Positions 20,885-61,910 of a stretch of DNA of 64,000 nucleotides are shown here, in pieces (position 1 is the stretch's first letter; the number at the start of each line of letters is the position of its first letter). Under the pieces are notes generated by a model that was given only the letters and a program-made list of their open reading frames with translations, was not told the DNA's origin and did no database searches. The stretch is from the IMG/VR virus record IMGVR_UViG_3300046665_000548, positions 186,001-250,000 of that record; one strand, written 5' to 3'. The position numbers were made by a program, and so were the translations under genes.

Positions 20885-22084
20885 TCAATACATGTTGAAG
20901 TTGGCGACTTTTAGTCCATCGCCGTCAATTCGTAAAGCCGCAGATGACAATCGGCCGCCTTTTCCGGAGCCCGTGTCGAGGAAGATCGTGTTACCGCCGT
21001 TGCTGTTGACGACCGTCATTGGCTTGGCTGTTGAACGAATGTCATGGCCAACGATGACAGTCATATCGGCAGGAACATTCTCCGTCCAAGTGTAACGACG
21101 TGCTGGGCGTTCTTCATTATAGTTCGCATCGAATTCTCCAAAGAGCGCCCAGGTTTCTAATTCTTTTGCAGTTGCCGATCCCGTCCAGAAACCTGGATGT
21201 ACCCCAGCGTGAGTGAAAAGAATGTTGCCGATCACTCGCCAATGACTTGACCTACTGACGAGACCTTTGAACCGCCCCTGCCAGCGCTTTCTGGCGGGCA
21301 ATCCCAATGATCCTAGGGCGTCCGTGGTGACCTTGTTGCCGTCGCTCAGTCGAACAGACGTGCGACCTCGCTCAATCTGATTGATCCATCTCATGATCTT
21401 TCGTTCATGATTACCAAGGATCATCTCACCCTGGCCGCGCATAACAACGCGATAGACCTCATCAGCGACTTCCAGCGTGTCGGAGCCGTAATCGATCACA
21501 TCACCCAGGAAGATCATGTAATGGTTTCGAGATCGAGCCCAGTCCAACGCGCTCAACAGAGATTGATACATCCCGTGAACGTCCCCAATGACGGTGATGC
21601 CATTCCAGTTCGCTTTGAGGCTTTCCAGATCGGGCTTTGTTTTGTCTACAAGCGACGGCTGATGAATTCTCCAGTCAATGACCTCGGCCAGTCCGTCGCC
21701 ACGAAGCAAGTCTTTTTCAGCCGCGTAGAAACGCTGCACGGATTGTTCGTCCGCTCCAGCAGGATCACAAAGGAAGTAGAAAACCGGAACACCAATATCG
21801 CTTCCCAATCGCGCGAGAGACATTCGGTCTTCCCGTCGAAGATTAGGAGCGTCAACAACAACGCGTTCGCCAAGATCAAGCTTCACCTGAATGCGGTGCC
21901 TGATCTCAGCGAAAACAATCGAATTGATTTCTGGTTTACTTTTCTCACCTACGAGATTGTAGGTCACATTGGCAGCACTAAGAATCTCGTAATCGGGGAA
22001 ATAACGAGCAAGTGTTTGCTCTCGATTTACTTGAGATGGACTTACCGCAATTACTAAAGAATGAGAAGGAACAACTTTTTGCAT
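20885..22084 (-). CDS. Polynucleotide kinase-phosphatase-like protein: degenerate AAA_33 kinase plus intact calcineurin-like phosphoesterase
   Basis: GDVHG, GDVIDYG, GNHE, THAG, VGHD and LDTG motifs; the P-loop reads VSPSQVNRE. Confidence 0.8.
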   Translation of the reverse strand: MQKVVPSHSLVIAVSPSQVNREQTLARYFPDYEILSAANVTYNLVGEKSKPEINSIVFAEIRHRIQVKLDLGERVVVDAPNLRREDRMSLARLGSDIGVPVFYFLCDPAGADEQSVQRFYAAEKDLLRGDGLAEVIDWRIHQPSLVDKTKPDLESLKANWNGITVIGDVHGMYQSLLSALDWARSRNHYMIFLGDVIDYGSDTLEVADEVYRVVMRGQGEMILGNHERKIMRWINQIERGRTSVRLSDGNKVTTDALGSLGLPARKRWQGRFKGLVSRSSHWRVIGNILFTHAGVHPGFWTGSATAKELETWALFGEFDANYNEERPARRYTWTENVPADMTVIVGHDIRSTAKPMTVVNSNGGNTIFLDTGSGKGGRLSSAALRIDGDGLKVANFNMY

Positions 22085-22313
22085 TATAGAACACTGTACT
22101 GAAAACTTGAATGTAACTTCAAGTTTATTGTGTTCTACTACTACGTCGCCTAATTCGACGGAGCCAAAATGGCAGCGAGACGGAGTACACTCATCTCGCT
22201 ACGCAGCACGGTGAGGATCGCGTTGGCTTGCTTGATCTCACCTTCCGAGCGCAACTCACCCTCAAGCTTCGTGAGGGCTGCGCGCGTCTTTGTAACCTGG
22301 GTATTCGCGTCGG

Positions 22314-23708
22314 TCATTGCTTCTCCATAACCTCACTCATTGCTTGCATATCGAGCGCCGCAATCGGCGTATCGCCAGAGTACGCAAGCTTTGCGAATAG
22401 TGCGTCATTTGCCGTTGGAACGGCCATTGCTATGCAATAGTTGTCTTTGGCGCGGCGAACCTTGAAACTTACATTCGAGGCAATTTCCTCGAACGCTTTG
22501 ATGTCGTCCGGGCTGAGTTCGCTCTCGTAGCTAATCCGCCATTCTTTATCGATTTTCGCACGAACGACGACCATGCCTTGATATTTGTCGAGTTCGCCGC
22601 GTTTCTCGATATCGTTGAACAGTTTCCGAACCGGAGAGCCGAATTGAACGGTGAGCGCACGAAGTTTCCACGTTCGCTTGTACCATTCCTGGAGATCGAT
22701 GGTCTCAACCTCCTGCTTCGCGAGTTTGTCGAACTTAACCGCTTCCCAGGTTTCGGGTAGGTCCATTGCCTTCGAGTCGCCAGCCCAATCGGGCCGATCC
22801 GTGCCGGGCATGTCTTGATAATATCCGGACCAACCGAGGATTGACTGCTTCACTCGCGCCATATCATCAAAACGCTTGGCCTTCATGAACTTGTCCGTCA
22901 TGGTGAGCTTTACATCGGTACCGTTCCACTCAAGCCACGGCGTAGTTTCCATGAACAGCCCGGTCGAGCGGTCACGCAGAACGTATTGGAACGTGGTCGG
23001 AATATTGACGGCTTCCACAAACGGTCCGAGTTGGTTGAACGGTAGCAGGAAGTTATCCCCGTCAGCCTCGCAGGGCACACAGAGGCCGTCGTACAACATC
23101 CACACGTAACCGTTTCTCATCGCCGCGAGCGGATGAGTGGCGTTCCTAACGCCTGGAATCACGTTCCCACGACTGAACTTGCCGGTGACTTTGATCTCGG
23201 TCCCGGCCGCGAGCTTCACGTAAGGTTGGGCGATGTATTCGAACACCCCTTTGGCCTCAAGGGCAGCTTCGAGGTCCTTCAAAGAGCCCGAGACGCCAGC
23301 CTTTGACCGCTTAGCATCGTGAAACTTTCGATGGGCTTCGCTCCATCGATCATCGTTTTCGTTATACGTGAACGCGACATCTTCGGTAAGACGCCAGATC
23401 GAGCCCTTCACCATCTGCTGTTGCTTAGTGATTGCGCGCTCTTTTTTCGGAGCCGACGCCTTGGCGGGCTCTTCGGCAGGAGTGACGTAGCCGATCAGAG
23501 TCCGCTTTCCGGACCATTCAACGTAGCGAAGATCATTGCCTGGAACTGCGCCGAGACGAGGCAAGTACGCCGAGTGAAGATCATGAATGTATTTGACCTT
23601 CACGACCTGATCACGAGACGCTGGCTTAGGGTCGTCAAACCCATACCCATCGTAAACAGGAGTGCCCTTCGGTACGCGCACGTATCCGCCAACAACGATC
23701 TCCGACAT
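22314..23708 (-). CDS. Hypothetical protein (464 aa)
   Basis: Long ORF with AAAGGA RBS; no motif recognised. Confidence 0.7.
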   Translation of the reverse strand: MSEIVVGGYVRVPKGTPVYDGYGFDDPKPASRDQVVKVKYIHDLHSAYLPRLGAVPGNDLRYVEWSGKRTLIGYVTPAEEPAKASAPKKERAITKQQQMVKGSIWRLTEDVAFTYNENDDRWSEAHRKFHDAKRSKAGVSGSLKDLEAALEAKGVFEYIAQPYVKLAAGTEIKVTGKFSRGNVIPGVRNATHPLAAMRNGYVWMLYDGLCVPCEADGDNFLLPFNQLGPFVEAVNIPTTFQYVLRDRSTGLFMETTPWLEWNGTDVKLTMTDKFMKAKRFDDMARVKQSILGWSGYYQDMPGTDRPDWAGDSKAMDLPETWEAVKFDKLAKQEVETIDLQEWYKRTWKLRALTVQFGSPVRKLFNDIEKRGELDKYQGMVVVRAKIDKEWRISYESELSPDDIKAFEEIASNVSFKVRRAKDNYCIAMAVPTANDALFAKLAYSGDTPIAALDMQAMSEVMEKQ

Positions 23709-24004
23709 GCCGTCTCTTCCTTTATAGGGCTGGCTCTGGCGCTTCGCGCCTCAAAACATCAACCAGCGATGAGTAATAGATACGAGGAACGCCGAAGCGC
23801 CCGTCAGCAAACGTCGAAGCACGCCAATCACGACCGGTACTCCAGACGGTTATGCCGCCCTTCGTGAACGTAGCGGGATTGTGCCAATGATCGTTTCGAA
23901 AAGACACTTCCCAACCAGCCGCCTCGGCGTCCGGTATCGCCAAGAGATCGTCGCGAATCTTCTTTTTCTCTTTGATCTCGTCAACTACATATCCGGGTAG
24001 CAAA

Positions 24005-24673
24005 TTAAGCGCACTCATTTTCTTCCTCCGTGAACAATCTTGGGCCATCCCCAAACAGAGCCCAGCGGTCATCATCCGCAATCACAACGGGACCCGGCAA
24101 TGTCGATTGACCGAATCTGCTAATCAGAAACCACCCAAACCGATCCTCGGGCTTCCCAATGGAACGCAGTGGCGGGGGCCTATCGCTTCCTCCCTGGAAT
24201 GGCGCACCTGACCAATAATGGTCATGGATATCGCCAATAAATCCGTCTGTGACGCAGATCGCCGTGATTGGCTCTTTCGCCCCGATCATATAATCCGACA
24301 CCGGGCGGATCAGCGTTCCTCCACCACCCTGGAGTTGGATGCGGACCGCTTGCTCGGGTGAACCAATGCGCTGAACGCTCCGAACATCGGCGTCAAACTG
24401 CATCACAGACATCAGCGCGTGTTGTCCGACCTTCTCAGTTATGTACTGAAAAATAAATTTGGTCACACCGAGTATATGCCGAACGGGCATTCCTCCACTG
24501 ACATCGAGAGCGACCACGTAATGGCGTTCCGCCGTCAGAGGACCAAGTTGGCCCAAGAGACCGGCAGCACTTGCCTTCCAGATCGGTTTGAGCCCGTCAC
24601 TATTCATTTCGGTTTGTTTCGCGAAAGCTTGAACTGCGCAGTCGGATCGCATTTCTGGAATACAGCGAGCCAT
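24005..24673 (-). CDS. vWA-like domain protein (DUF2201 C-terminal type); start uncertain
   Basis: VALDVSGGM (DxSxS-like), QFDADV, GGGGT, CVTDG. Confidence 0.65.
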   Translation of the reverse strand: MARCIPEMRSDCAVQAFAKQTEMNSDGLKPIWKASAAGLLGQLGPLTAERHYVVALDVSGGMPVRHILGVTKFIFQYITEKVGQHALMSVMQFDADVRSVQRIGSPEQAVRIQLQGGGGTLIRPVSDYMIGAKEPITAICVTDGFIGDIHDHYWSGAPFQGGSDRPPPLRSIGKPEDRFGWFLISRFGQSTLPGPVVIADDDRWALFGDGPRLFTEEENECA

Positions 24674-25537: not shown

Positions 25538-26014
25538 TCAGCGCTCGTAACGGGCCATGCGCTTCATCGCGCGGCGCTCTGCGGCAGCTTCCTGGGCCAT
25601 CGTCGGCATCGGCATCGGGACGCTCTTGTCACCGAATTGCGAGGCCACGTCGTAAAGGCGGAACAGATATTCCTTGCCCTTCGGGTTCTTCGCCTTGATC
25701 GGAGTGGCATCGCGAGTCGGCGCGACGCCCGTGATCGTATAGATGGTATTGCCCTGACGGAACGACTTGCCGAACCATTCCTTCTTGTAGCCGATGATGT
25801 TGGCGTAATTCTCGAATTCTTCCTTCGCGCTGTCCTTCGCGGCCTTCTGATCCTTCACCACAGCCTTGATCTTGAAGGTGCATTCCGTCGTGCCGATGCT
25901 GCCACCGCTGTTGATGAACATGAGGCCGTGCTTTTGGGCGACCTCCTGGAGAGCAGCGAGAATGTCGGCCTGAACGGCGGTGGCGTTTTCACGGTCGAAC
26001 TTGGTGACAGTCAT
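25538..26014 (-). CDS. Hypothetical early protein
   Basis: GGAGAG RBS; follows the early promoter at 26042-26069. Confidence 0.65.
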   Translation of the reverse strand: MTVTKFDRENATAVQADILAALQEVAQKHGLMFINSGGSIGTTECTFKIKAVVKDQKAAKDSAKEEFENYANIIGYKKEWFGKSFRQGNTIYTITGVAPTRDATPIKAKNPKGKEYLFRLYDVASQFGDKSVPMPMPTMAQEAAAERRAMKRMARYER

Positions 26015-26065
26015 GTGGCTCTCCAGCGTTTCGATAGACACAACATACCACGATTCGACAATACG

Positions 26066-26953
26066 TCAAGCGTTGCGTTTCATCTGCTTGTATCGACGGT
26101 CGTAAAAATCGAGCTTCTGCTCGTCAAAATTGGCGTTGGACGCCCGCATCTTTCCGCCATCCAGGAATAGCTCTGTCGCCCGAGCACGGTCCATGAAGGT
26201 CGATGCTTTGTCATCGACCCTCGGCCCCCAACCGAGACGGAGCAGAAAATTCAGAATACCGTCCGGATCATAGCCACGATCACGGTAATCGAGCAGGCTA
26301 GCCGCGCCGTCGCGCTTTGCCATTTTCTTGTTGGCCTTGAAGATCAAACCAACGTGCGCAAATTTAGGAATGTCCAGCGGGTTATCCGAGGCGTGGTTCA
26401 GCGCGGAAAAGATCGCAACCTGCTTAGCGGTATTCGCGATATGGTCGGTGCCACGGATGATGAAATTCACCTCCAGGTCCCAATCATCAACGATAGACGC
26501 GAACTGATAGGTGGCCTGTCCTAGCTTATCGCCGCCGCGCACCAGACATAGCCGTCCGTCGATCTCCTCAACCGCTTTGTCGGAAACCTGAATGTCGCCA
26601 GCGATCTCATCGCGCCAAACACGAGGCATGAACGGCTGCCAAGACAGCATGATCGCCCCATTGTCGGCGGTCGTGGCAAAGCCAGCGTCAAGAAGACGCC
26701 TAGCATAGGCGCTGTAAATCGGACCGCGCTCAGACTGGCGCACGAAACGATCCCAGTCCAGCCCAAGCCATTTCAGACCGTCAAAGATCGGCTGCTCGAC
26801 CTCAACCATATTCCTGTCGGCATCGGTATCGTCCATTCGCAAAATGAACTGACCGCCCGAAGCCTTTGCGGCGAGCCAATTGAAATAAGCCGTACGGGCC
26901 GTCCCGATATGCATCATGCCGGTCGGTGATGGTGCAATGCGCGTCTTGTACAT
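26066..26953 (-). CDS. Truncated glutamyl-tRNA synthetase-like protein (catalytic core only)
   Basis: RIAPSPTG, HIGT (HIGH), LRMDDTD, IRGTDH, KMAKRDG (KMSKS-like). It ends at 295 aa with no anticodon-binding domains. Confidence 0.9.
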   Translation of the reverse strand: MYKTRIAPSPTGMMHIGTARTAYFNWLAAKASGGQFILRMDDTDADRNMVEVEQPIFDGLKWLGLDWDRFVRQSERGPIYSAYARRLLDAGFATTADNGAIMLSWQPFMPRVWRDEIAGDIQVSDKAVEEIDGRLCLVRGGDKLGQATYQFASIVDDWDLEVNFIIRGTDHIANTAKQVAIFSALNHASDNPLDIPKFAHVGLIFKANKKMAKRDGAASLLDYRDRGYDPDGILNFLLRLGWGPRVDDKASTFMDRARATELFLDGGKMRASNANFDEQKLDFYDRRYKQMKRNA

Positions 26954-27240
26954 GGTTTACCAAAGGTTCGATTAAGAGTCGGACAGAACGTAGTAGGTGC
27001 GTGGCCTCGTTCGCATGCGCCACACGAAGTGCAACCACACTACGCGCGGCCACCCACCGGTAAGTTTTGACCGATCCCATTCGGCAGGCCCGTACAACCG
27101 GACCGGCCGCCACGCGAACCATCTGTGATAGGTATCGTCAATCGTGCGCTCGAAGATCATTTCGCCACCTTTAGCGTTTGTAAGAACACAAGAAGTATAC
27201 TTCGTCAAGCACTTCTCTGTGAATTTTGACTTGTCCTAGT

Positions 27241-27923
27241 AAAGGATTCGATAGTGCATCACGAATACCATACATCCAGGAGTGTAAAGGGGTCACCTCC
27301 GCCCCACAACCGATATCCGGGACAGTATACGAGACCTTCTGAAACAATGAGGTCGCAGACCGGACTTATGAGGCAGGGTGTGCCACCGAGCCGAGCACGA
27401 TCCCACAGGGGATGTGAAAGCGGCTGCTCGTCGGAGTTTAGCTCCGAAAAAAGGCACCGTCAGTAAGAGGAGAATTGTGTCTTGATCCATTTGACACGTC
27501 TCCGCGTGCAGTATGTCTTCTCATGCAACTGCACGAGTTTGGAAAAATCCCATAACCGTTGATGCCGTAACGACACCGGAAGCACAAGGCGCGTATCTGT
27601 TCAAGGCTCGTCCACAGAACGCATAACCCTAAAGCTTCGATTGTAGGTGGTCGGGCAGAGAAAGGGCGATTATGAGTGGTCTAGGGTGACCGCCACTCGC
27701 TATGTAAAAATAGCTACTCGCTTCGAGAGATGATGAACTCAGGTACAGATCATTGTTGCTTTCTCTCCTCTATGTTCGCAAGAACGTAGGGGGGAGAAAG
27801 CGAATCAAATCTAGGTACAGGATTATTATAAGTGATAATAATCGTGTATGGGTGCTCATGCGAGCTTGCGAGCAATGAGTGCACAGGAACAGGGGTGGTG
27901 AGCGAAGCGAGTACACCCCTCGC
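27241..27923. other. Hairpin-dense non-coding region (candidate origin or ncRNA)
   Basis: No credible ORF; hairpins at 27758-27801, 27821-27843, 27852-27883 and 27891-27920. Confidence 0.4.
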
Positions 27924-27937
27924 TAAATATCCATCCT

Positions 27938-32707: not shown

Positions 32708-32771
32708 GCGTCGCTCCAGCGCTTGTGAATCGATGATCACAAACTACCAGAATTTGGACGTTCGTCAAGCC

Positions 32772-44376: not shown

Positions 44377-44591
44377 TGGTGGAGGCGACGGGATTCGAAC
44401 CCGCGACGCAGCCAGCACCCAAGCATTACCAAGGGCTGAAATTGGGTTTAGAACAGCGTTTCGCCGTATACCATTCACCATAGCACACGGCTGTATCGAA
44501 ACGTCCCCGCTTCCATTTAACTAGCTGCCAGTTTTACCTGGACCGGCATCCTGTTCTCCGGTGCTCTGCCGAGCGCTGAGCATTCGCCCCC
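44377..44591 (-). ncRNA. ssrA: Compact one-piece tmRNA (215 nt)
   Basis: GGGGGCG/CGCCTCC-ACCA acceptor with G3:U70, T arm GCGGG-TTCGAAT-CCCGT, helix 2 AGCACC/GGTGCT, PK1-like ATGCCGG..GTAAAACTGGCA, and an H5-like hairpin at 44463-44491 with TGA in the loop. Confidence 0.8.
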
Positions 44592-44612: not shown

Positions 44613-44687
44613 TGGAGGTTGAGGTGGGGATCGAACCCACTCGTGGAGGTTTTGCAGACCTCAGCGTTCCCATTTCGCCACTCAACC
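44613..44687 (-). tRNA. tRNA-Cys(GCA)
   Basis: GGTTGAG/CTCAACC, GAGGT-CTGCAAA-ACCTC, U73, CCA. Confidence 0.95.
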
Positions 44688-44688
44688 G

Positions 44689-44764
44689 TCAACGCGACAG
44701 GATTCGAACCTGTGATCCCCAGTCTCCCGAACTGGTAGGGACGGCCAGACTCCCCTACGCGCTG
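44689..44764 (-). tRNA. Atypical tRNA-Pro(GGG) (C33, A37, G38; no encoded CCA)
   Basis: CAGCGCG/CGCGTTG, A73, CCAGT-TCGGGAG-ACTGG, ACAGG-TTCGAAT-CCTGT. Confidence 0.75.
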
Positions 44765-44772
44765 TAACTCAA

Positions 44773-44979
44773 TTAGTCTAGCTTGAACCGCTCTGCGACA
44801 GGCAGACGGCGATAGCGCTCGATAACTCCGCTATAGAATTTGATAGCTTCGAGCGCGATCTCTCTGACTTCAACTAGGCTGTCGGCTTCGACGCAAAAGT
44901 AAGGCGAACTACTCGACATAGCCACCCAACGGCCCGGTTCGTATTCTCTGACGGTGACCGTCACGATGTTATCCGTCAT
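44773..44979 (-). CDS. HicB-like antitoxin-fold small protein inside the tRNA array
   Basis: VTVREYEPGRWVAMS...FCVEADSLVEVREIALEAIKFY resembles the HicB N-terminal domain; GAAGGGG RBS. Confidence 0.5.
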   Translation of the reverse strand: MTDNIVTVTVREYEPGRWVAMSSSSPYFCVEADSLVEVREIALEAIKFYSGVIERYRRLPVAERFKLD

Positions 44980-45000
44980 GACGGTCCCCTTCAAAACCTA

Positions 45001-45077
45001 TGGAGTCGGCGGCAGGACTTGAACCTGCATACTCCGGGTTTGCAACCCGGCTGACTAGCCATTCTCAACACGCCGAC
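45001..45077 (-). tRNA. tRNA-Cys(GCA), second copy
   Basis: GTCGGCG/CGCCGAC, CCGGG-TTGCAAA-CCCGG, U73, CCA. Confidence 0.92.
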
Positions 45078-45078
45078 G

Positions 45079-45153
45079 TGGTGACGGAACCTGGGATCGA
45101 ACCAGGGACATGCGCCGTATGAAAGCGCCGCTCTACCGCTGAGCTATACCGCC
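45079..45153 (-). tRNA. tRNA-Met(CAT), elongator-type (Ile2 not excluded)
   Basis: GGCGGTA/TTCCGTC, GCGCT-TTCATAC-GGCGC, ACCA. Confidence 0.88.
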
Positions 45154-45160
45154 GAAAGCA

Positions 45161-45246
45161 TTGTTCGTGACCCACCGGACTACTCAAAGGACCGGGAGGC
45201 TGTCCTTGTCCATATGAGAGTTTGCCTCCCGATGGGTCTCGAACAA
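45161..45246 (-). ncRNA. Unassigned structured element within the tRNA array
   Basis: Nested stems TTGTTCG/CGAACAA, GACCCA/TGGGTC and CGGGAGGC/GCCTCCCG. Confidence 0.35.
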
Positions 45247-45261
45247 CGCTCTATTAACTTG

Positions 45262-45338
45262 TGGTCAGGGTGGCAGGCTACGACCCTGCGATTTCCTCTT
45301 CCCGAAAGAGGCGGATTACCAGACTTTCCCACACCCTG
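45262..45338 (-). tRNA. tRNA-Pro(CGG) with non-canonical T loop (GTCGTAG)
   Basis: CAGGGTG/CACCCTG, CCTCT-TTCGGGA-AGAGG, ACCA. Confidence 0.9.
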
Positions 45339-45352
45339 TAACTCTGTATGCT

Positions 45353-45438
45353 TGGTGCGGCCAAGAGGACTCGAACCTCCACTCTTTTTGGGAACTACCA
45401 CCTCAAGGTAGCGCGTCTACCAGTTCCGCCATGGCCGC
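45353..45438 (-). tRNA. tRNA-Leu(GAG)
   Basis: GCGGCCA/TGGCCGC, CTACC-TTGAGGT-GGTAG, long variable arm, ACCA. Confidence 0.95.
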
Positions 45439-45462
45439 ATTCGTGGTGTTAGATGTGCTCTG

Positions 45463-45537
45463 TCAGGCGTCTCGGATTCGAACCGAGGATACTCCTGTAC
45501 CCAAAACAGGCGGATTACCAGACTTTCCCAACGCCTG
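45463..45537 (-). tRNA. tRNA-Pro(TGG) embedded in a 16-bp acceptor-stem extension
   Basis: CAGGCGT/ACGCCTG, CCTGT-TTTGGGT-ACAGG; no CCA at the normal position; flanks pair (45448-45463 with 45538-45553). Confidence 0.9.
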
Positions 45538-45590
45538 ACAGAACACATCTAACGCACGCGACTAGAGTAATCTCTTGCTCCAGTCAGTAT

Positions 45591-45678
45591 TGGTGGGCGG
45601 AGTAGGACTCGAACCTACGTAGGTTTTGAAGCCGGGAGGTTTACAGCCTCCGCCGATTGCCGCTCCGGTCACCCGCCC
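45591..45678 (-). tRNA. tRNA-Tyr(GTA)
   Basis: GGGCGGG/TCCGCCC, GGAGG-CTGTAAA-CCTCC, long variable arm, ACCA. Confidence 0.95.
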
Positions 45679-45740: not shown

Positions 45741-45776
45741 AAAGAAAAACCCCGGTCAGATTTCTCTGCCGGGGCT
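45741..45776 (-). terminator. Attenuator terminator upstream of the tRNA array
   Basis: AGCCCCGG-CAGA-GAAA-TCTG-A-CCGGGGT followed by TTTTCTTT. Confidence 0.9.
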
Positions 45777-45800: not shown

Positions 45801-45887
45801 TTACACCACCAAGATGCGCGCGACCAGCCCGAGGGCAGAAAGCCCCCTGGTGGGATAGCACGGCATTGGGTAAAGAGCGTTGAACAT
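45801..45887 (-). CDS. Attenuator leader peptide MFNALYPMPCYPTRGLSALGLVARILVV (not in ORF track)
   Basis: GAGGAAG RBS; codons 5-12 match the downstream tRNAs; codons 14-20 can pair with the terminator 5' arm. Confidence 0.8.
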   Translation of the reverse strand: MFNALYPMPCYPTRGLSALGLVARILVV

Positions 45888-45931: not shown

Positions 45932-45939
45932 TATTTATA
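45932..45939 (-). promoter_or_regulatory. T4-type late promoter TATAAATA driving the leader and tRNA array
   Basis: Exact T4 late consensus 45 nt upstream of the leader ATG. Confidence 0.75.
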
Positions 45940-45969
45940 TAACCAGACTGATTCGAGTGTCAACAACTT

Positions 45970-50752: not shown

Positions 50753-51368
50753 TCACGCCCCCATAGCAAGCATTAGTCGATCCACGCCGACCGCCCATCC
50801 TACACCTTCCTGGTAAGTTCCGCCACCAGCAACTTGCTTTTGAGCGCCTAAACTTTCCACGGCGGCTTCGAAACCGTCCTCGACATAGTAGGATAGACCT
50901 CGTTTTACCGAATCGCTCCAAGTATAGGCCATGCCAAGCTTATCCAAGCAAAGTCGCAAAAGTTGTTTTGCTTGATCTGATTCGGCCGAACCAAGCATCT
51001 CGATGCCGAACTGGGTGAATTCGCGGTAGCGGCCCTTCTGGGGGCGCTCGTAGCGGTAGCAGCGCTGCACATAGAAGACGTTGCGGGTCTTCATGCGCTT
51101 GGACCAATCGTCCCGCCACGTCTCCTGAACGAGCCCGGTAACTTCAGGAATCAGGCACACGTTGCGTTCGCCCTTATCCTGGAAACGCCACATCATCTGG
51201 GAATTCTCGGCCCCGACTTTTTCATCAAAGGTGGCGCTCTCCCAAATGCTTGGGACAATAATTTCCTCGAATTCAGCGTCGATGAAGACACTCCCGAAGA
51301 GTATTGACAACCTTATTGTAGAGCCGGGCCTCGTCGCCGGACAAAATTCGTGTTCCTCTTAACATCAT
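50753..51368 (-). CDS. Minimal histidyl-tRNA synthetase-like catalytic core, interrupted by a +1 frameshift near 51299-51293
   Basis: Frame 1: MMLRGTRILSGDEARLYNKVVNTLR (stop at 51273). Frame 2: VFIDAEFEEIIVP (motif 1), YRYERPQKGRYREFTQ (motif 2), RGLSYY, GGG.Y, GWAVGVDRL (motif 3). No insertion or anticodon domain. Confidence 0.8.
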
Positions 51369-51824: not shown

Positions 51825-51900
51825 TGGTACCAGTTGGGAGAATCGAACTCACCGTATTCCGATCCACAGTCGGACGCTACTACCATTGAGCTAAACTGGC
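51825..51900 (-). tRNA. tRNA-His(GTG), alphaproteobacterial type (no G-1, G1:U72, A73)
   Basis: GCCAGTT/AACTGGT-A-CCA; TCCGA-CTGTGGA-TCGGA; T at position -1. Confidence 0.92.
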
Positions 51901-51988: not shown

Positions 51989-52022
51989 TAGAAAAAGCCC
52001 CCGATCTTGCGACCGAGGGCTT
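51989..52022 (-). terminator. Attenuator terminator upstream of the tRNA-His pair
   Basis: AAGCCCTCGGTC-GCAA-GATCGGGGGCTT followed by TTTCT. Confidence 0.9.
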
Positions 52023-52049
52023 CGAAAACTCAACCGATGAAGACGCGCG

Positions 52050-52130
52050 TTATCGCATCACGGTTGGCCGAAGCCCCGAGGTATGATGCGAATGCTGGTG
52101 CGAGAAGTTCTTCATGATGGGGTATTTATA
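52050..52130 (-). promoter_or_regulatory. Late promoter plus His-rich leader peptide MKNFSHQHSHHTSGLRPTVMR
   Basis: TATAAATA at 52123-52130, ATG 52115; in frame with the tail of ORF 52050-52637; antiterminator pairing with the terminator arm. Confidence 0.8.
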
Positions 52131-52637
52131 CTTGTGGTTTGTGTCATCGTCAAGTTGTTTTTCCAATATGAAGGAATGGGTGGTTTCCTTCAGCAGTTCA
52201 GCCACGCCATTTGCGGCCGAAACCATCTCAGCGTGTCGGTCGCCGGGGATTTTCCCCTCCAAACTATTCGCGGTGCCGTGCAACCAGGATAGCGCGGTTG
52301 GATAATTGATGTCGAAATTCGGAGCCATTTTCTCGTCAATTCCCTCGTCGGAAATCTGAGCGAGCGGATAGATGCTCCTGATCATGTATGAGGCGATGTA
52401 TTCGAACAGCCACCACTGAATATCACCCCTGGGATGCTTCCATTCAAGCTTCCTCGGAGAGATGCGCCAAAACCAAAAAGTTTCGTCTTCTGGCGTCAGA
52501 ACGCTGATCCCGTTGTCGCCGTAAAGCTCGATGCGCAAGCAACCATCGAACCGTGATGCGTTGACCTCACGCAGTTTTTCCACGCACAGATTGAGATCGA
52601 TGTTTTTCTTGAAGGAAACGAATGCGCAATTACCCAT
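52050..52637 (-). CDS. Hypothetical protein whose last 21 codons double as the His leader
   Basis: ORF track. Confidence 0.6.
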   Translation of the reverse strand: MGNCAFVSFKKNIDLNLCVEKLREVNASRFDGCLRIELYGDNGISVLTPEDETFWFWRISPRKLEWKHPRGDIQWWLFEYIASYMIRSIYPLAQISDEGIDEKMAPNFDINYPTALSWLHGTANSLEGKIPGDRHAEMVSAANGVAELLKETTHSFILEKQLDDDTNHKYKYPIMKNFSHQHSHHTSGLRPTVMR

Positions 52638-59310: not shown

Positions 59311-60705
59311 TTACTTGTCGCTGGCCTCATGAGCCGCGATGAACTTGATCACGTTCTCGGACCATCCGTCGATGTGAACCCACTTCGGCTTGTAGCCGAT
59401 GCCGTTCTTCTCGGTGGAGATGTTGATCAGGTAGTTGCGCTTCCCGAAGGCGTCCGCCTTGTCAGGCTTGTTCAACGGGTTGGTATCGCAATCCTGCTCG
59501 TCCGTGATAACGATCACACGATCCGCATTCTTCTCGGCCTTCGCAATCTGCTCCATGCACTGCACGAGGAAGATTCCCCCGCCACCCTGGGCGCTTGCAG
59601 CCTTGCGGATCGCATCAACCATCGCCATACCCTGGCGAGCAGGGATCAAACGAGTGTCATGGATGCGACGGCTATCCGAACCAGCCGTGGCGTAAACCAC
59701 CGGCTCTTCCGAAACACCAGACACGAAGGCAGACAAAGCCGCAGCCGTATCGAGACGGGTCAGTTCGGACTTGCGCGAGAGCATCGCGCCCATCGAACCC
59801 GACACGTCAACCACCAGAACAGTCTTGCCCGGCAGCTTCTCGATATCGGCAAGCGCACCCATCAGTGCCTGATCAAGCTCACGCTCGAACTTGGGCGCAT
59901 GACGAGCCGCCGTGATGAAGCGGAACGGGAGTACGCGGCCAGCACCCTTGCGGGCAGTGATCGCTTCCTTGATCAGCTTCGCATCGACCTTCTCCTGCTC
60001 CATCTTGCGGAGGTTCCGCAGAAGAGCGAGATAGCCAAGCTTGCCATCGGTCAGAAGACGCTCGAAAGTGTCCTTCTTGTCCGCACCGGCCGTGAGATTT
60101 GCCTCCCAAGTATCCGGGGTAGCCATCTTGTCAGCGACAAGACGCTCCCACAGGGCGCGCTGATCGACCGACTTCGGCTTCGGATGCACGAGGAAATACA
60201 CGTCGCGAAGCGTGATCGCGTTGTCGCGATTGTACTTGGCAAGCTGGTACTCATCGAACTTGAGGAACGCCTTGCGGAGGCCCTTACGCATCGCGTGAGA
60301 CATGACCTTCTTGAGCTTGTCCACACCAACGCCACGCTGCTTCGCATGGATCGCCAGCAATTCGGCAAGCTCGTCGGCACGCGTCACGACATTCGCAATC
60401 GTATCTGCGACGATTGCTCCCTTGTGCTGGGTCGCGAGGATCGAGCACAGGAGAAGCGAGACGTGTCGGAGGTTCTGCTCGTGGCGAGCCTCGATAGCGA
60501 TCTCGGCCAGGGTCTCCGGCTTCACACCATTCGCAAGCTCTACAATGCGGTCGTAGACGGACTTGCCGTCCACATAGAACGCATCCTCCCACAGGAGACA
60601 GGTCATGACGGTGCGACGCAGATTCCCCTCAACAGTCGTCTTGACCGCTTGAGCACCACCAGCCGTGAAAATCGGAGACGGCTTCTTCGCAACATTTGTT
60701 CGCAT
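59311..60705 (-). CDS. Ro60/Rsr-like TROVE plus vWA RNA-binding protein
   Basis: EARHEQNLR, RADELAE, AKYNR...LRDV.FLVHPKP, TWE, LGYLALLRNLR, VLPFRF, VDVSGSM (MIDAS), VITDEQ; GGAGGT RBS. Confidence 0.9.
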   Translation of the reverse strand: MRTNVAKKPSPIFTAGGAQAVKTTVEGNLRRTVMTCLLWEDAFYVDGKSVYDRIVELANGVKPETLAEIAIEARHEQNLRHVSLLLCSILATQHKGAIVADTIANVVTRADELAELLAIHAKQRGVGVDKLKKVMSHAMRKGLRKAFLKFDEYQLAKYNRDNAITLRDVYFLVHPKPKSVDQRALWERLVADKMATPDTWEANLTAGADKKDTFERLLTDGKLGYLALLRNLRKMEQEKVDAKLIKEAITARKGAGRVLPFRFITAARHAPKFERELDQALMGALADIEKLPGKTVLVVDVSGSMGAMLSRKSELTRLDTAAALSAFVSGVSEEPVVYATAGSDSRRIHDTRLIPARQGMAMVDAIRKAASAQGGGGIFLVQCMEQIAKAEKNADRVIVITDEQDCDTNPLNKPDKADAFGKRNYLINISTEKNGIGYKPKWVHIDGWSENVIKFIAAHEASDK

Positions 60706-60725
60706 GACATATACCTCCATCAGAT

Positions 60726-60752: not shown

Positions 60753-60763
60753 AGTAGAACTGG

Positions 60764-60894
60764 TAGAAAACGGAATTAGCCGAACCGGGTAACACCCCAC
60801 CCTAGAGTGAGGCTGTTGGCTTCGACGCCAACTCTGTCGGGGTTAAAACCCTAACATTCATCCTAAGTAACCCTGCTCTACGTCACGTTTTCTA
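60764..60894 (-). ncRNA. Y-RNA-like RNA A (long, degenerate tRNA-like module)
   Basis: Conserved core TGACGTA-GAGCAGGGT-TACTT...ACCCGGTTC-GGCTAATTC closed by TAGAAAACG/CGTTTTCTA. Confidence 0.8.
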
Positions 60895-60896
60895 GT

Positions 60897-60982
60897 GTAT
60901 TCGGAATTAGGCGGGAACGGTTATGGCCAGAGGCCATTCGTTATTTGACAAGCGAAGTAACCGCGCCCTACGTCACGAACAC
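60897..60982 (-). ncRNA. Y-RNA-like RNA B (short)
   Basis: Same core with a covarying stem GGGCGCGGT/ACCGTTCCC; promoter ATTGAC-N18-CTATAA at 60990-61019. Confidence 0.8.
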
Positions 60983-61035
60983 AATACACTTATAGCTGGA
61001 ACAATCCCGCCGCGTCAATACCAAATTACGAAAAA

Positions 61036-61305
61036 TTAAGCAACGATCTCGCCGCAATCCGAAGGATCGAGCGGGTTGATCATGACTGGATAATGCTTGG
61101 GCGACTGGGCGGCACGGACACACGGGGTCAGCCTGCCATTGGTGCTGCACCAGCCGGTATCGATCACGACCATATCTTCGATTGGATTGTCCTTGTTGCC
61201 GAACGGATGCTTGGAGAAATCCACCTTGATGCGCTGGCCGGGAGAGTAGGCGGTAACCGAACTGTGAAGCGGGTTCTTCTTCGACGCCTTTTGAAACCGG
61301 ACCAT
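61036..61305 (-). CDS. Hypothetical protein between the Y-RNA cassettes
   Basis: AAGGGAG RBS before MVRFQKASKK. Confidence 0.5.
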   Translation of the reverse strand: MVRFQKASKKNPLHSSVTAYSPGQRIKVDFSKHPFGNKDNPIEDMVVIDTGWCSTNGRLTPCVRAAQSPKHYPVMINPLDPSDCGEIVA

Positions 61306-61357
61306 GCAAATCTCCCTTGCTGACAACGATCTCAATCTACCACAAATTGATGATCTG

Positions 61358-61597
61358 TCAAGCACGTTTACCGAGGAAAACACGCGCGAAACGCGCGGCA
61401 TGGCGAATCAAAAGAGCAGGTTGATACCGGAACGTCGGTCCGCTCCTATTCTTGATGATCAAACGACCATTCGGATTGATCGCGTAGTCTGCGTGTTGCA
61501 ATGCAATTGGACGCTGCTTGTCATCGAGCGCTTGTGCAATAACCTCTTGGACGAACAGGATATTGCCGGATTTGTCATAGCAACGACGATACAACAT
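61358..61597 (-). CDS. Hypothetical protein between the Y-RNA cassettes
   Basis: AGGAG RBS. Confidence 0.55.
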   Translation of the reverse strand: MLYRRCYDKSGNILFVQEVIAQALDDKQRPIALQHADYAINPNGRLIIKNRSGPTFRYQPALLIRHAARFARVFLGKRA

Positions 61598-61611
61598 CGA
61601 AATCTCCTAAT

Positions 61612-61643
61612 GAAAAAGGCGGCCCCTCTTGCGAAGAACCGCC
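61612..61643 (-). terminator. Intrinsic terminator after Y RNA C
   Basis: GGCGG-TTCTT-CGC-AAGAG-GGG-CCGCC followed by TTTTT. Confidence 0.8.
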
Positions 61644-61661
61644 CTAATCAGGGTGCTTAAG

Positions 61662-61800
61662 TGGAAGACGGAATTAGGCGAACCGGGTCAGCTAGCGCTC
61701 TACCGCTGAGCTACCTAAACCTTGCGGCCTAGGGTTGGATTCGAACCAACGACCTCTCGTTTATCATACGAAGTAACCCTGCTCTACGTCACGTCTTCCA
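61662..61800 (-). ncRNA. YrlA-type Y RNA C (circularly permuted tRNA mimic)
   Basis: Order: T arm GTTGG-TTCGAAT-CCAAC, closed acceptor-like hairpin CCTAGGCC-GCAA-GGTTTAGG, D arm TAGCTCAGCGGTAGAGC, inside the shared core and TGGAAGACG/CGTCTTCCA. Confidence 0.88.
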
Positions 61801-61802
61801 TT

Positions 61803-61874
61803 GTACCGAGAATTAGGCTCGGACGGTCTTTTTAGCATTCAAAGCGAAGTAACCGCTCGATACGTCATCGGTAC
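61803..61874 (-). ncRNA. Y-RNA-like RNA D (minimal, 72 nt)
   Basis: GTACCGA/TCGGTAC closing stem, TCGAGCGGT/ACCGTCCGA inner stem, same conserved loops. Confidence 0.8.
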
Positions 61875-61881
61875 CGCGTCG

Positions 61882-61910
61882 ATATAGTCGAAGCACGCGA
61901 GACCGTCAAG
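61882..61910 (-). promoter_or_regulatory. Rhizobial-type sigma70 promoter CTTGAC-N17-CTATAT
   Basis: Exact match to the Sinorhizobium RpoD consensus; predicted TSS coincides with the 5' end of RNA D. Confidence 0.8.

What the first reader, a model, noticed from the sequence alone, without database searches (positions are those of the whole stretch)
20885..61910. Integrated picture: a stall-sensing translation-rescue toolkit against tRNA-targeting immunity
Each part is seen separately above: two (perhaps three) codon-matched attenuators, tRNAs with altered loops or stems, tmRNA, a HicB-like protein, two anticodon-blind synthetase cores, a Pnkp-like phosphoesterase, and Ro60 with tRNA-mimic Y RNAs. 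Established: many abortive-infection systems cleave or modify tRNAs. Inference: together they form an inducible sense-and-replace counter-defence rather than constitutive codon-bias compensation.
Basis: inference. Interest (0 to 1): 0.7.

Follow-up and report, generated by a model that had tools for sequence, protein, structure and literature searches.

The report
Stall-sensing switches before phage tRNA genes
A 608-kb phage places short "sensor" reading frames, made of exactly the codons that the tRNA genes just downstream decode, in front of those genes, so it probably makes replacement tRNAs only when ribosomes stall for lack of them; the other RNA-related genes in the region are real but were not shown to belong to one system.

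Summary
The window is part of a 607,744-bp phage genome with 57 tRNA genes. Most listed parts exist. Some need correction: the "tmRNA" is an unresolved alanine-type tRNA-like RNA, the HicB likeness is a weak fold match, and the "Pnkp" has no kinase P-loop.

The strongest result is the attenuators. Two lie in the window (Tyr/Pro/Leu/Met/Cys array; tRNA-His) and eight in the genome. Each has a near-identical promoter, a short ORF built from the codons read by the tRNAs downstream, an intrinsic terminator with a matching antiterminator, then the tRNAs. Three related 415–578-kb phages have such leaders too, and their codons track their differently composed arrays (39 arrays, combined p=1.4e-18). 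More distant relatives, including two cultured phages, lack them.

A third sensor was not in the finding. The mini-HisRS gene next to tRNA-His needs a conserved +1 frameshift at an RF2-like site whose slow codon is His (11 of 16 homologues).

So inducible "sense-and-replace" is well supported by design. Counter-defence as its purpose is untested. A single toolkit is not supported: Ro60 is absent from the relatives, the phosphoesterase lies far from their arrays, and the GluRS core is unique. I found no prior description of either sensor.

The parts
45933..45963 (-). Promoter of the array attenuator: TTGACA-N17-TATAAAT
   Evidence: The motif TTGAC-N16-19-[TG]ATAAAT occurs only 7 times in the 607-kb genome, and each time it is followed by a codon-matched leader.
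45801..45887 (-). Leader ORF MFNALYPMPCYPTRGLSALGLVARILVV. Its codons CTT TAC CCA ATG CCG TGC TAT CCC CTC are those read by the tRNAs downstream.
   Evidence: All 7 distinct anticodons of the array are covered by an exact Watson-Crick codon (p=0.004).
45745..45774 (-). Intrinsic terminator CCCCGG-N13-CCGGGG-TTTTT. Its 5' arm can instead pair with the leader segments CAGGGGGCU or CUCGGGCU (antiterminator).
   Evidence: The predicted terminator probability falls from 0.98 to about 0.4 when a ribosome is placed on codons M8/P9.
44613..45678 (-). Array of 8 tRNAs: Tyr-GTA, Pro-TGG, Leu-GAG, Pro-CGG, Met-CAT, Cys-GCA, Pro-GGG, Cys-GCA
44773..44979 (-). 68-aa orphan ORF inside the array with a HicB-N-domain-like fold (weak evidence)
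   Evidence: No Pfam or NCBIfam hit and no homologue. AF2 pLDDT 78.5. Top PDB folds are 2yzt, 1wv8, 3k6q and 6g1n, at E = 0.3-1.
44377..44591 (-). 215-nt tRNA-Ala-like RNA at the 3' end of the array (G3:U70, A73, encoded CCA, D- and T-arms, about 130-nt insert). tmRNA identity is unresolved.
   Evidence: Rfam tmRNA 31.9 bits, below the gathering score of 47. Folding z = -3.4. ARAGORN negative. No homologue in the relatives.
52124..52153 (-). Promoter of the His attenuator: TTGACG-N17-TATAAAT, 8 nt before the ATG (leaderless or nearly so)
52050..52115 (-). His leader MKNFSHQHSHHTSGLRPTVMR (CAC CAT CAT CAT). It is in frame with the end of ORF 52050-52637.
   Evidence: It is a paralogue of the Ser leader at genome 259568-259639.
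51992..52023 (-). Terminator GAAGCCCTCGG-N-CGGGGGCTTTTT. The leader tail GGGGCTTCG is complementary to its 5' arm.
   Evidence: Own-tail pairing is -19.6 kcal/mol against -13.9 with the Ser terminator arm.
51825..51900 (-). tRNA-His(GTG), with G1:U72 and A73 and no encoded G-1
50753..51368 (-). Mini-HisRS: catalytic core without the insertion and anticodon-binding domains, read in two frames
   Evidence: Pfam and NCBIfam hisS matches. It aligns to T. thermophilus HisRS residues 37-156 and 226-316. It is conserved in 16 phage contigs, with a tRNA-His within 2.5 kb in 10 of 14 fetched loci.
51282..51295 (-). Candidate programmed +1 frameshift site GGGAG-TGT-CTT-CAT: SD-like element, 3-nt spacer, P-site CUU, A-site His codon
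   Evidence: The same layout occurs in 11 of 16 homologues, and 5 are unshifted single ORFs with the same N-terminus.
26066..26953 (-). GluRS catalytic core of 295 aa with HIGT and KMAKR motifs and no anticodon-binding domain
   Evidence: tRNA-synt_1c E = 9e-54. gltX_bact 254 bits (cut-off 290) and GluQRS about 137 bits (cut-off 250). Relatives carry 472- and 486-aa versions. Motifs.
20885..22084 (-). Calcineurin-type phosphoesterase with a degenerate kinase-like N-domain
   Evidence: It is conserved in 5 relatives, far from their arrays.
59311..60705 (-). Ro60 orthologue (TROVE + vWA)
   Evidence: Absent from G001-G005. Six other viral contigs carry relatives.
61662..61800 (-). YrlA-like Y RNA: long closing stem plus a tRNA-like T-arm/D-arm module (61694-61757)
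   Evidence: Rfam YrlA 30.7 bits, E = 2.8e-4 in the local search. Folding z = -4.1. Syntenic YrlA-like hits lie next to Ro60 in L009 and L011.
60764..60983 (-). Two further Y-RNA-like stems (60896-60983 and 60764-60894) sharing the motifs GUGACGUAGRGC..GGUUACUU and ACCCGGUUCGSCUAAUUCCG. A fourth lies at 61803-61874.

Best explanation
The region belongs to a megaphage, probably of Rhizobiales-type alphaproteobacteria, whose tRNA supply is under negative feedback from ribosome stalling.

**Sensor type 1: leader-peptide attenuators (trp/his type)**
- A sigma-70-like promoter drives a short, often leaderless ORF. Its codons are those read by the tRNAs encoded just downstream, isoacceptor by isoacceptor.
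- If those charged tRNAs are plentiful, the ribosome runs through the leader, the intrinsic terminator forms, and the tRNA genes stay silent.
- If one is scarce, the ribosome stalls. The leader tail then pairs with the 5' arm of the terminator, and RNA polymerase reads into the array.
- Two such units lie in the window (Tyr/Pro/Leu/Met/Cys array; tRNA-His with mini-HisRS) and eight in the genome.

**Sensor type 2: an RF2-like +1 frameshift site in the mini-HisRS gene**
- The layout is SD-like element, 3 nt, CUU, CAU. Its slow A-site codon is His, so the full-length enzyme should be made mainly when His-tRNA(His) is short.

**What is shown and what is inferred**
- Shown: the architecture, the codon match, the antiterminator complementarity and the conservation.
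- Inferred: actual stalling, read-through and frameshifting.

**The other parts**
- Ro60 with Y RNAs, the phosphoesterase, the GluRS core, the 68-aa ORF and the tRNA-Ala-like RNA are real RNA-related accessories.
- Only the last two lie in a sensor-controlled transcription unit, and none was shown to co-occur with the sensors.
- What depletes the tRNAs (host anticodon nucleases, host shut-off, a long infection, starvation) remains open.
For: **Architecture**
- The promoter motif occurs 7 times in 607 kb, each time before a matched leader. An eighth copy has a 20-nt spacer.
- One or two intrinsic terminators lie between each leader and its tRNAs.

**Codon match**
- The best-ORF enrichment was tested against 2,000 random genome segments for 39 arrays in 4 genomes. 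Twelve had p<0.01, and the Fisher combined p was 1.4e-18.
- In 9 of 11 leaders every anticodon of the array has a cognate codon (combined p=2.4e-8).
- The own leader-array assignment is the single best of 40,320 permutations within this genome. For all 23 pairs, none of 100,000 permutations reached it.

**Covariation across genomes**
- Where Tyr/Cys/His tRNAs sit with Ser tRNAs, the leaders read HSYCYSSSYH. Here they sit elsewhere, and the Ser leader is SQSSSSSSAS.
- The Asp/Glu leader has no Gly here, while relatives with Gly tRNAs in that array have Gly-rich leaders.

**Antiterminator**
- Own tail against own terminator arm averages -18.5 kcal/mol, against -13.5 for cross pairs. This is the best of 5,040 permutations.
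- Ribosome-mask folding lowers terminator probability at sensor codons in 4 of 6 leaders.

**Negative controls**
- None of 12 arrays in G006-G008 and none of 37 in phages Phosso and Atu_ph07 reach p<0.01.

**Frameshift**
- Eleven of 16 homologues are shifted at [C/G]TT-CA[T/C]. Ten of those 11 have GGAGG-like + 3 nt upstream.
- Five homologues are unshifted, with a contiguous N-terminus.
- In two genomes the possible shift window is at most 15 nt.
Against: - There are no expression data. No RNA run holds this sequence.
- Equilibrium folding shows no switch for the His, Asn and Asp/Glu leaders, so the model has to rely on kinetics.
- Leaderless translation of five of the leaders is assumed, not shown.
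- The His leader is in frame with the end of a 195-aa ORF, so its independent translation is uncertain.
- The Gly/Met/Ala array has the promoter type but no leader, and 19 of 57 tRNAs lie outside attenuated units.
- Leaders were partly found by looking for the match. The nulls correct for that, but the four genomes are related and so are not fully independent.
- At the frameshift site the 0-frame CAY and UGA are partly forced by the +1-frame residues F-I/T-E. Conservation of the His codon is therefore weaker evidence than it looks.
Confidence: 0.75

Rival explanations
1. All the parts (attenuated arrays, tRNA-like RNA, HicB-like protein, synthetase cores, phosphoesterase, Ro60/Y RNAs) form one inducible counter-defence system aimed at host tRNA-cleaving or tRNA-modifying immunity.
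For: - The sensors match isoacceptors rather than amino acids. For example CCA, CCG and CCC each occur once for three tRNA-Pro genes, and all five Leu/Gln anticodons are covered. That fits sensing loss of particular tRNAs.
- New tRNA cures tRNA loss but not amino-acid starvation.
- The genome also carries RtcB and an Rnl2-like RNA ligase.
- The concept is established for jumbo phages in general (PMC7824862).
Against: - There is no co-inheritance. Ro60 is absent from 5 relatives, and the phosphoesterase is present even in relatives in which only 2 tRNA genes were found (incomplete records) and lies far from the arrays.
- The GluRS truncation is unique to this genome, and the tRNA-like RNA and the 68-aa ORF are orphans.
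- The phosphoesterase lacks a kinase P-loop, and its best family is a protein-phosphatase-like phage family.
- No host genome or defence system was available to test.
- The anticodon loops of the phage tRNAs are canonical.
Confidence: 0.25
2. The sensors report the host's amino-acid or growth state, as classical biosynthetic attenuators do, and serve to time or scale phage translation capacity rather than to replace lost tRNAs.
For: - The same stalled-ribosome signal arises from uncharged tRNA.
- The architecture is that of amino-acid operon attenuators.
- The His unit also controls a synthetase-like enzyme, which addresses charging rather than tRNA amount.
Against: - The regulated products are tRNAs, which do not relieve amino-acid shortage.
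- Leaders mix up to eight amino acids in exact correspondence with the array, which has no rationale for amino-acid sensing.
- Synonymous codon choice tracks the anticodons present.
Confidence: 0.15
3. The short ORFs and hairpins are incidental. The arrays are expressed constitutively for codon-usage compensation, and the codon match is chance or a composition effect.
For: - Individual p-values for some leaders are modest, for example 0.02 for the in-window array leader.
- Some arrays and many single tRNAs have no leader.
Against: - Combined statistics, permutation tests and negative controls all argue against chance.
- The promoter motif is exclusive to leaders.
- Leader codons change together with array content across genomes.
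Confidence: 0.04

Closest known systems
Ribosome-mediated transcription attenuators of amino-acid operons and of pheST (trp, his, thr, leu, ilv, pheA leaders)
   Same: - The order is promoter, short leader ORF enriched in regulatory codons, then mutually exclusive antiterminator and terminator hairpins before the regulated genes.
- The Ile/Thr/Val leader (VTTTVVIITTV) even resembles thr/ilv leaders.
   Different: - The regulated genes are tRNA arrays, not enzymes.
- Leaders combine up to eight amino acids, and their synonymous codons follow the anticodons of the array.
- Most are leaderless transcripts and are carried by a virus.
- No Rfam leader family matches them.
- I found no published case in the searched library. 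E. coli pheV, which I recalled as a possible precedent, shows no Phe-rich leader.
prfB (RF2) programmed +1 frameshift
   Same: The layout is an SD-like element, a 3-nt spacer, a CUU codon in the P site, a slowly decoded A-site codon whose decoding depends on the gene's own product, and a 0-frame stop close by (prfB layout from own knowledge).
   Different: - The slow codon is a sense codon (His CAU/CAC) in a histidyl-tRNA-synthetase-like gene, not a stop codon.
- The P-site codon is GUU in several genomes.
- It is untested experimentally.
Jumbo-phage RNA-repair and translation-rescue gene sets (Iyer et al. 2021, PMC7824862)
   Same: The set combines phage tRNAs, RtcB and Rnl ligases, phosphoesterases, and a TROVE protein with a tRNA-like partner. 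It is interpreted as an answer to tRNA-cleaving host immunity.
   Different: - That work describes gene content, not regulation, and does not mention attenuation.
- In this genome the parts are scattered and are not co-inherited.
Bacterial and mycobacteriophage Ro60 (Rsr) with YrlA-type Y RNAs (Chen et al. 2014, PMC4201824)
   Same: - The Y RNAs are encoded within about 1 kb of Ro60, on the same strand.
- One of them has a T-arm/D-arm tRNA mimic closed by a long stem.
   Different: - Four stems lie in two promoter-terminator units.
- The scores are below Rfam's gathering score.
- The host phage is a megaphage of a different lineage.
GluQRS/YadB, HisZ and other truncated synthetase paralogues
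   Same: They are catalytic cores without an anticodon-binding domain.
   Different: - The GluRS core scores better against bacterial GluRS than against GluQRS, and reaches neither cut-off.
- Mini-HisRS is much smaller than HisZ, also lacks the insertion domain, sits next to tRNA-His and carries the frameshift.

Membership tests
Leader-peptide transcription attenuator | Promoter followed by a short translatable ORF upstream of the regulated genes | tested here: met
   There are eight units with the same promoter motif and an ATG 4-8 nt (one at 45 nt) after it. Translation itself was not shown.
Leader-peptide transcription attenuator | Regulatory codons in the leader correspond to the regulated product | tested here: met
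   with covariation across four genomes.
Leader-peptide transcription attenuator | Intrinsic terminator between the leader and the regulated genes | tested here: met
   GC-rich hairpin plus T-run in all eight G000 units and in most units of the relatives. None was found for three Gly/Asp/Glu leaders of the relatives.
Leader-peptide transcription attenuator | Alternative antiterminator pairing whose formation depends on ribosome position | tested here: inconclusive
   Specific tail/arm complementarity is present. Masked folding shows a switch for 4 of 6 leaders but not for the His, Asn or Asp/Glu leaders.
Leader-peptide transcription attenuator | Read-through increases when the cognate charged tRNA is limiting | not testable with these tools
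   No RNA data were available.
prfB-type programmed +1 frameshift | Gene product requires a +1 shift, and the two frames are conserved as one protein | tested here: met
   The N-terminal 0-frame ORF is conserved as protein. Five homologues are contiguous in one frame. The shifted ones have no conserved start codon in the +1 frame.
prfB-type programmed +1 frameshift | SD-like element 3 nt upstream of a slippery P-site codon, followed by a slow A-site codon | tested here: met
   Ten of the 11 shifted genes have GGAGG, GGGGG, GGGAG or GGGTG, then 3 nt, then [C/G]TT-CAY. That the His codon is slow is inferred.
prfB-type programmed +1 frameshift | Measured frameshifting that responds to the level of the product | not testable with these tools
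   Needs a reporter assay or mass spectrometry.
tmRNA | tRNA-Ala-like domain (G3:U70, T-arm, CCA end) | tested here: met
tmRNA | Tag reading frame with a resume codon and pseudoknots, scoring above the family threshold | tested here: not met
   Rfam 31.9 bits against 47. ARAGORN negative at default settings and nonsensical at relaxed settings. The only short frames are AAS* or AGPGKTGS*. The element has a true D-stem and an anticodon-like hairpin. The genome has a proper permuted tmRNA elsewhere.
Ro60 / YrlA Y RNA | TROVE + vWA protein | tested here: met
   Pfam TROVE E = 1.3e-17. The Ro60 vWA match (21.9 bits) is below its cut-off. phrog_850 matches over the full length.
Ro60 / YrlA Y RNA | ncRNA within 4 kb on the same strand, with a tRNA-like module and a closing stem | tested here: met
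   The Rfam gathering score was not reached (30.7-42 bits against 69).
HicB antitoxin | HicB N-domain fold | tested here: inconclusive
   The top structural matches are HicB-type, but at E = 0.3-1 with TM 0.53-0.63. There is no HMM hit.
HicB antitoxin | Adjacent HicA toxin and a C-terminal DNA-binding domain | tested here: not met
   The ORF is 68 aa and flanked by tRNA genes.
Pnkp (polynucleotide kinase-phosphatase) | P-loop kinase, metallophosphoesterase and ligase domains | tested here: not met
   The phosphoesterase motifs are intact. Walker A is absent and there is no ligase domain. TIGR04075 gives 90 bits against a cut-off of 750.
GluQRS (YadB) | GluRS-like catalytic core without an anticodon-binding domain that reaches the family model | tested here: inconclusive
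   The domain layout fits. The GluQRS models give about 137 bits (cut-off 250 or more) and gltX_bact gives 254 bits (cut-off 290).
HisRS / HisZ | Class II motifs 1-3 and the His boxes | tested here: met
   It aligns to HisRS 37-156 and 226-316, including the YRYERPQKGRYREF and GGG..GVGWAVGVDR segments. It lacks the insertion and anticodon-binding domains, so it is not a full member (hisS 130 bits against a cut-off of 287).

The most novel reading that the evidence does not exclude
A virus carries a near-complete, self-regulating tRNA supply. Eight isoacceptor-matched leader-peptide attenuators, covering 17 amino acids, and a cognate-codon +1 frameshift in a minimal HisRS act as per-codon sensors of ribosome stalling. 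These sensors switch on replacement tRNAs, and a charging enzyme, only when the host's pool fails, for example after attack by anticodon nucleases. This would be the first attenuation control of tRNA genes and the first natural sense-codon analogue of the RF2 frameshift.
Probability: 0.55. Interest if true: 0.9.

Novelty: new variant of a known kind. Interest (0 to 1): 0.85.

Why it matters
Phage tRNAs are usually discussed as constitutive codon-bias fixes or as replacements for tRNAs destroyed by host immunity. How they are regulated is essentially unknown.

- **Demand-driven supply.** Here the wiring itself says the supply follows demand. Each array is gated by a sensor written in the codons that the array decodes.
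- **A testable question.** This turns "why do huge phages carry tRNAs?" into an experiment with small reporter constructs.
- **Synthetic-biology parts.** The leaders offer compact, codon-specific stall sensors.
- **An evolutionary series.** Across genomes, sensor codons are rewritten whenever tRNAs move between arrays.
- **The frameshift site.** If it works as inferred, it extends the RF2 autoregulatory logic to a sense codon and a synthetase-like enzyme.

Tried and rejected
- **tmRNA.** ARAGORN, at default and lowered thresholds, did not support a tmRNA at 44377-44591. BLAST of the element against five relatives found only T-arm matches.
- **68-aa ORF.** The homologue search found only the ORF itself.
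- **RNA evidence.** No RNA run holds the region.
- **Equilibrium folding.** Folding with ribosome masks shows no switch for the His, Asn and Asp/Glu leaders. I do not count this against the model, but it is not support either.
- **First array test.** Splitting arrays at 150-nt gaps gave only p=0.0017, because it cut transcription units apart. I replaced it with 400-nt clustering and an ORF-based statistic.
- **Generic attenuator scan.** Requiring an SD sequence missed most leaders, because they are leaderless.
- **Recalled precedent.** E. coli pheV shows no Phe-rich leader.
- **TAG recoding.** Despite two tRNA-CUA genes, I found no signal of recoding, so I kept code 11.
- **Relatives without leaders.** More distant relatives and the cultured phages Phosso and Atu_ph07 have no matched leaders. 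I used them as negative controls.
- **GluRS as a split gene.** The downstream ORF 25538-26041 and the surrounding DNA show no similarity to the C-terminal domain of the relatives' GluRS.
- **Literature.** Searches for attenuators before phage tRNA genes found nothing.

Full report
**Context**

The window is bases 186001-250000 of a 607,744-bp virus record that CheckV rates as complete. ARAGORN finds 57 tRNA genes and a permuted tmRNA in the genome. The closest cultured relatives by large terminase are Sinorhizobium phage Phosso (60.7% identity) and Agrobacterium phage Atu_ph07 (53.5%). The window's tRNA-His has G1:U72 and A73 and no G-1. From my own knowledge, that is the alphaproteobacterial type. 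The host is therefore probably a Rhizobiales-like alphaproteobacterium.

**Inventory of the listed parts**

| Part | Window position | Result |
|---|---|---|
| tRNA genes | range of the finding | 10 in the range, 12 in the window |
| "Pnkp-like" protein | 20885-22084(-) | Intact calcineurin-type motifs (GDVHG, GDVIDYG, GNHE). Its AAA_33-like N-domain has no Walker A, and there is no ligase domain. Best family: phrog_246, NinI-like phosphatase |
| GluRS core | 26066-26953(-) | 295 aa, keeps HIGT and KMAKR, ends before the anticodon-binding domain. Below both the GluRS and GluQRS cut-offs. Relatives G001 and G002 have 472- and 486-aa versions. No trace of the missing domain downstream |
| Mini-HisRS | 50753-51368(-) | Aligns to T. 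thermophilus HisRS 37-156 and 226-316, so it lacks the insertion and anticodon-binding domains |
| Ro60 | 59311-60705(-) | TROVE + vWA protein |
| Y RNAs | 60764-61874(-) | Four stems in two promoter-terminator units share 5' and 3' motifs. One (61662-61800) encloses a T-arm/D-arm module that matches Rfam YrlA below threshold |
| "tmRNA" | 44377-44591(-) | Alanine-identity tRNA-like RNA with real D- and T-arms and a ~130-nt insert. Below Rfam's threshold, not called by ARAGORN, no credible tag, no homologues |
| "HicB-like" ORF | 44773-44979(-) | Orphan of 68 aa with only weak fold matches to HicB-type proteins |
| Array tRNAs | 44613-45678(-) | Canonical anticodon loops |

Two other phage contigs also have a YrlA-like hit beside their Ro60. 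Ro60 with YrlA-type RNAs in phages is already published (PMC4201824).

**The attenuators**

Upstream of the 8-tRNA array lie four elements in order:
- a TTGACA-N17-TATAAAT promoter;
- the ORF MFNALYPMPCYPTRGLSALGLVARILVV;
- a hairpin with a T-run;
- no further promoter before tRNA-Tyr.

The leader's codons TAC/TAT, CCA, ATG, CCG, TGC, CCC and CTT/CTC are those of Tyr-GTA, Pro-TGG, Met, Pro-CGG, Cys, Pro-GGG and Leu-GAG. All seven anticodons are met by an exact Watson-Crick codon.

Scanning the genome for the promoter motif gave seven hits in 607 kb. Every one is followed within 4-8 nt (45 nt for the in-window array) by such a leader. An eighth has a 20-nt spacer.

| Leader peptide | tRNAs downstream | Position |
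|---|---|---|
| ..SSLFNKRFWRRVR.. | Phe, Leu-CAA, Trp, Arg x2, Lys x2 | elsewhere in the genome |
| MNKNVTTTVVIITTV.. | Ile, Thr x3, Val | elsewhere in the genome |
| MFNALYPMPCYP.. | Tyr, Pro x3, Leu, Met, Cys x2 | in the window |
| MKNFSHQHSHH.. | tRNA-His, then mini-HisRS | in the window, 52050-52115 |
| MFKNLLQQLQL.. | Gln x4, Leu x3 | elsewhere in the genome |
| ..SQSSSSSSAS.. | Ser x4 | elsewhere in the genome |
| MMMNRNNSNN.. | Asn x2 | elsewhere in the genome |
| ..SDEREED.. | Asp, Glu x3 | elsewhere in the genome |

All eight are followed by one or two intrinsic terminators. The Gly/Met/Ala array has a similar promoter but no leader.

**Statistics**

- For each array I took the best-scoring short ATG-ORF in the 600 nt upstream, using binomial enrichment of codons readable by the array.
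- I compared it with the same statistic in 2,000 random 600-nt genome segments. This corrects for having chosen the best ORF.
- Over 39 arrays in four genomes, 12 have p<0.01 and 16 have p<0.05. The Fisher combined p is 1.4e-18.
- Within this genome, the true pairing of eight leaders with eight arrays is the single best of all 40,320 permutations. Over 23 leader/array pairs, none of 100,000 permutations reached the observed match.

**Comparative evidence**

Three related genomes were examined (G001, G002, G003; 415-578 kb; terminase 65-71% identical). Their arrays are composed differently, and their leaders follow:

| Leader | Array it precedes |
|---|---|
| MTTIISSHSYCYSSSYH.. | Ser, Ser, Ser, Cys, Tyr, Tyr, His |
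| ..LLRRRKWLRR.. | Arg, Arg, Trp, Leu, Leu, Lys |
| MNRRLATLRLKTLRLKWL.. | Arg x3, Leu x5, Ile, Lys x4, Trp |
| MFAVATHIPANFVVGAFAVAMPAVVAPMNQIQP.. | Ile, Val, Gln, Met, Pro, Asn, Ala, Phe |
| Gly/Asp/Glu-rich leaders | Gly/Glu/Asp arrays |

- In this genome Tyr and Cys have moved to the Pro array and His stands alone. Its Ser leader has accordingly lost Y, C and H, and its Asp/Glu leader has no Gly.
- A further contig has Ser and His tRNAs but no Tyr tRNA among the six in the stretch examined. Its leader reads MFVSSSSHCSSSH.
- More distant relatives (G006-G008) and the cultured phages Phosso and Atu_ph07 do not sort their tRNAs by amino acid. They give no signal: 0 of 12 and 0 of 37 upstream regions at p<0.01.

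**Mechanism**

- In each G000 leader, a segment just 3' of the sensor codons is complementary to the 5' arm of its own terminator. Examples are CTCGGAGG/CCTCCGAG, GGGAGCTTCGAAC/GTTTCGAAACTCCC and GAGGGCCA/TGGCCCTC.
- Own pairs average -18.5 kcal/mol and cross pairs -13.5. The true assignment is the best of 5,040 permutations.
- The His and Ser leaders are paralogous scaffolds. Their tails and terminator arms have changed together.
- For the in-window array, the segments AGGGGGC, GCCCUCGGGCU, AGCCCCGG and CCGGGGU can play regions 1-4 of a trp-type attenuator. Placing a ribosome on M8/P9 lowers the predicted terminator probability from 0.98 to about 0.4.
- For the His, Asn and Asp/Glu leaders, equilibrium folding shows no switch, so a kinetic mechanism has to be assumed.
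- No RNA data exist for this sequence.

**A third sensor**

The mini-HisRS gene is read in two frames.
- A 0-frame ORF (MLRGTR..GDEA..Y..V..LR) encodes the HisRS N-terminus. It ends just after a His codon.
- The rest of the enzyme is in the +1 frame, without a conserved start codon of its own.
- Fourteen further loci were fetched. Eleven of 16 homologues carry the shift, always at [C/G]TT-CA[T/C].
- Ten of those 11 have GGAGG, GGGGG, GGGAG or GGGTG three nucleotides upstream.
- Five more distant homologues are one continuous ORF with the same N-terminus.
- In two genomes the shift window is at most 15 nt.

From my own knowledge, this is the layout of the RF2 (prfB) site, AGGGGG-UAU-CUU-UGA, with the enzyme's own cognate codon in place of the stop. 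The inference is that a pause at CAU when His-tRNA(His) is short would favour the shift and make the full-length enzyme.

One caveat applies. The +1-frame residues partly force the 0-frame CAY and UGA.

**The integrated picture**

Co-occurrence does not support one toolkit.
- Ro60 is absent from all five relatives.
- The phosphoesterase is in all five, but far from their arrays.
- The truncated GluRS is unique to this genome.
- Only mini-HisRS is consistently next to tRNA-His.
- RtcB and an Rnl2-like ligase exist elsewhere in the genome.

The general counter-defence reading of such gene sets is already published for jumbo phages, without any mention of attenuation (PMC7824862). It is not in the huge-phage survey either (PMC7162821). 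Matching by isoacceptor, with tRNAs as the product, favours sensing of tRNA loss over amino-acid starvation. The cause of the loss cannot be decided here.

**Verdict**

- The attenuators and the frameshift site are new variants of known mechanisms.
- They are well supported by sequence and comparison, but not yet by experiment.

Noticed in passing
G000:C1:4091-4256 and 1944-2020 (outside the window): Two tRNA genes have a CUA (amber-suppressor) anticodon, and one odd tRNA is called with a 4-base anticodon (ggaa). Relatives G001, G002 and phage Phosso also carry tRNA-CUA. I found no sign of TAG recoding in long ORFs. The Ser leader ends in TAG, so suppression would extend it towards its terminator.
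   Followed up: partly
G000:C1:576377-576796 (outside the window): ARAGORN calls a bona fide permuted (two-piece) tmRNA with the tag ANDNVAVSEYALAA. The tRNA-Ala-like RNA in the window would therefore be a second, different element.
   Followed up: no
window 27190-27940 (-): About 750 nt upstream of the GluRS-core operon have no ORF and no Rfam match. They are GC-rich with many hairpin-like repeats, which could mean a large non-coding RNA or a regulatory region.
   Followed up: no
G000:C1:252292-252434 (outside the window), also long tRNA hits in G001, G003 and Atu_ph07: Rfam tRNA matches of 106-143 nt that ARAGORN does not call suggest tRNA genes with 35-70-nt insertions in this phage group.
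   Followed up: no
window 51825-51900 (-): The phage tRNA-His has G1:U72 and A73 and no encoded G-1, the unusual identity set of some alphaproteobacteria (own knowledge). Together with the permuted tmRNA and the Sinorhizobium and Agrobacterium phage relatives, this points to a Rhizobiales-type host.
   Followed up: partly
window 31781-32740 (-), 39265-39837 (-), 29463-30056 (-), 38304-38870 (-): The finding's range also holds an ArdC-like anti-restriction protein (ArdcN + zincin peptidase), an AlkB-like 2OG-Fe(II) oxygenase and two NUDIX hydrolases.
   Followed up: no
G000:C1:530480-531505 and 99859-100314 (outside the window): An RtcB RNA ligase lies about 6 kb from the Asp/Glu array, and an Rnl2-type RNA ligase about 8 kb from the Gly/Met/Ala array. 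RNA-repair capacity exists but is scattered.
   Followed up: partly
G000:C1:108392-108442 (outside the window): The Gly/Met/Ala array has a related promoter (TTGTAA..TATAAAT) 24 nt before its first tRNA and no leader or terminator. It is the one large array that looks unattenuated.
   Followed up: partly
G000:C1:259568-259639 and window 52050-52115: The Ser and His leaders are paralogues. They share the 5' context TATAAATACNCCATCATG and the tail GTGATGCGATAR-CGCG, but differ in sensor codons and have co-varying terminator arms. This suggests that sensors evolve by duplication and recoding.
   Followed up: partly
window 43654-44022 (+): A Cro/C1-type HTH protein is encoded convergently, just beyond the 3' end of the tRNA-Ala-like RNA.
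   Followed up: no
G000:C1:81298 (+) (outside the window): A looser match to the leader promoter motif is followed after 4 nt by the short ORF MNTLQNFGVTFGLLRILVA, with no tRNA nearby. It could be another leaderless regulatory ORF.
   Followed up: no
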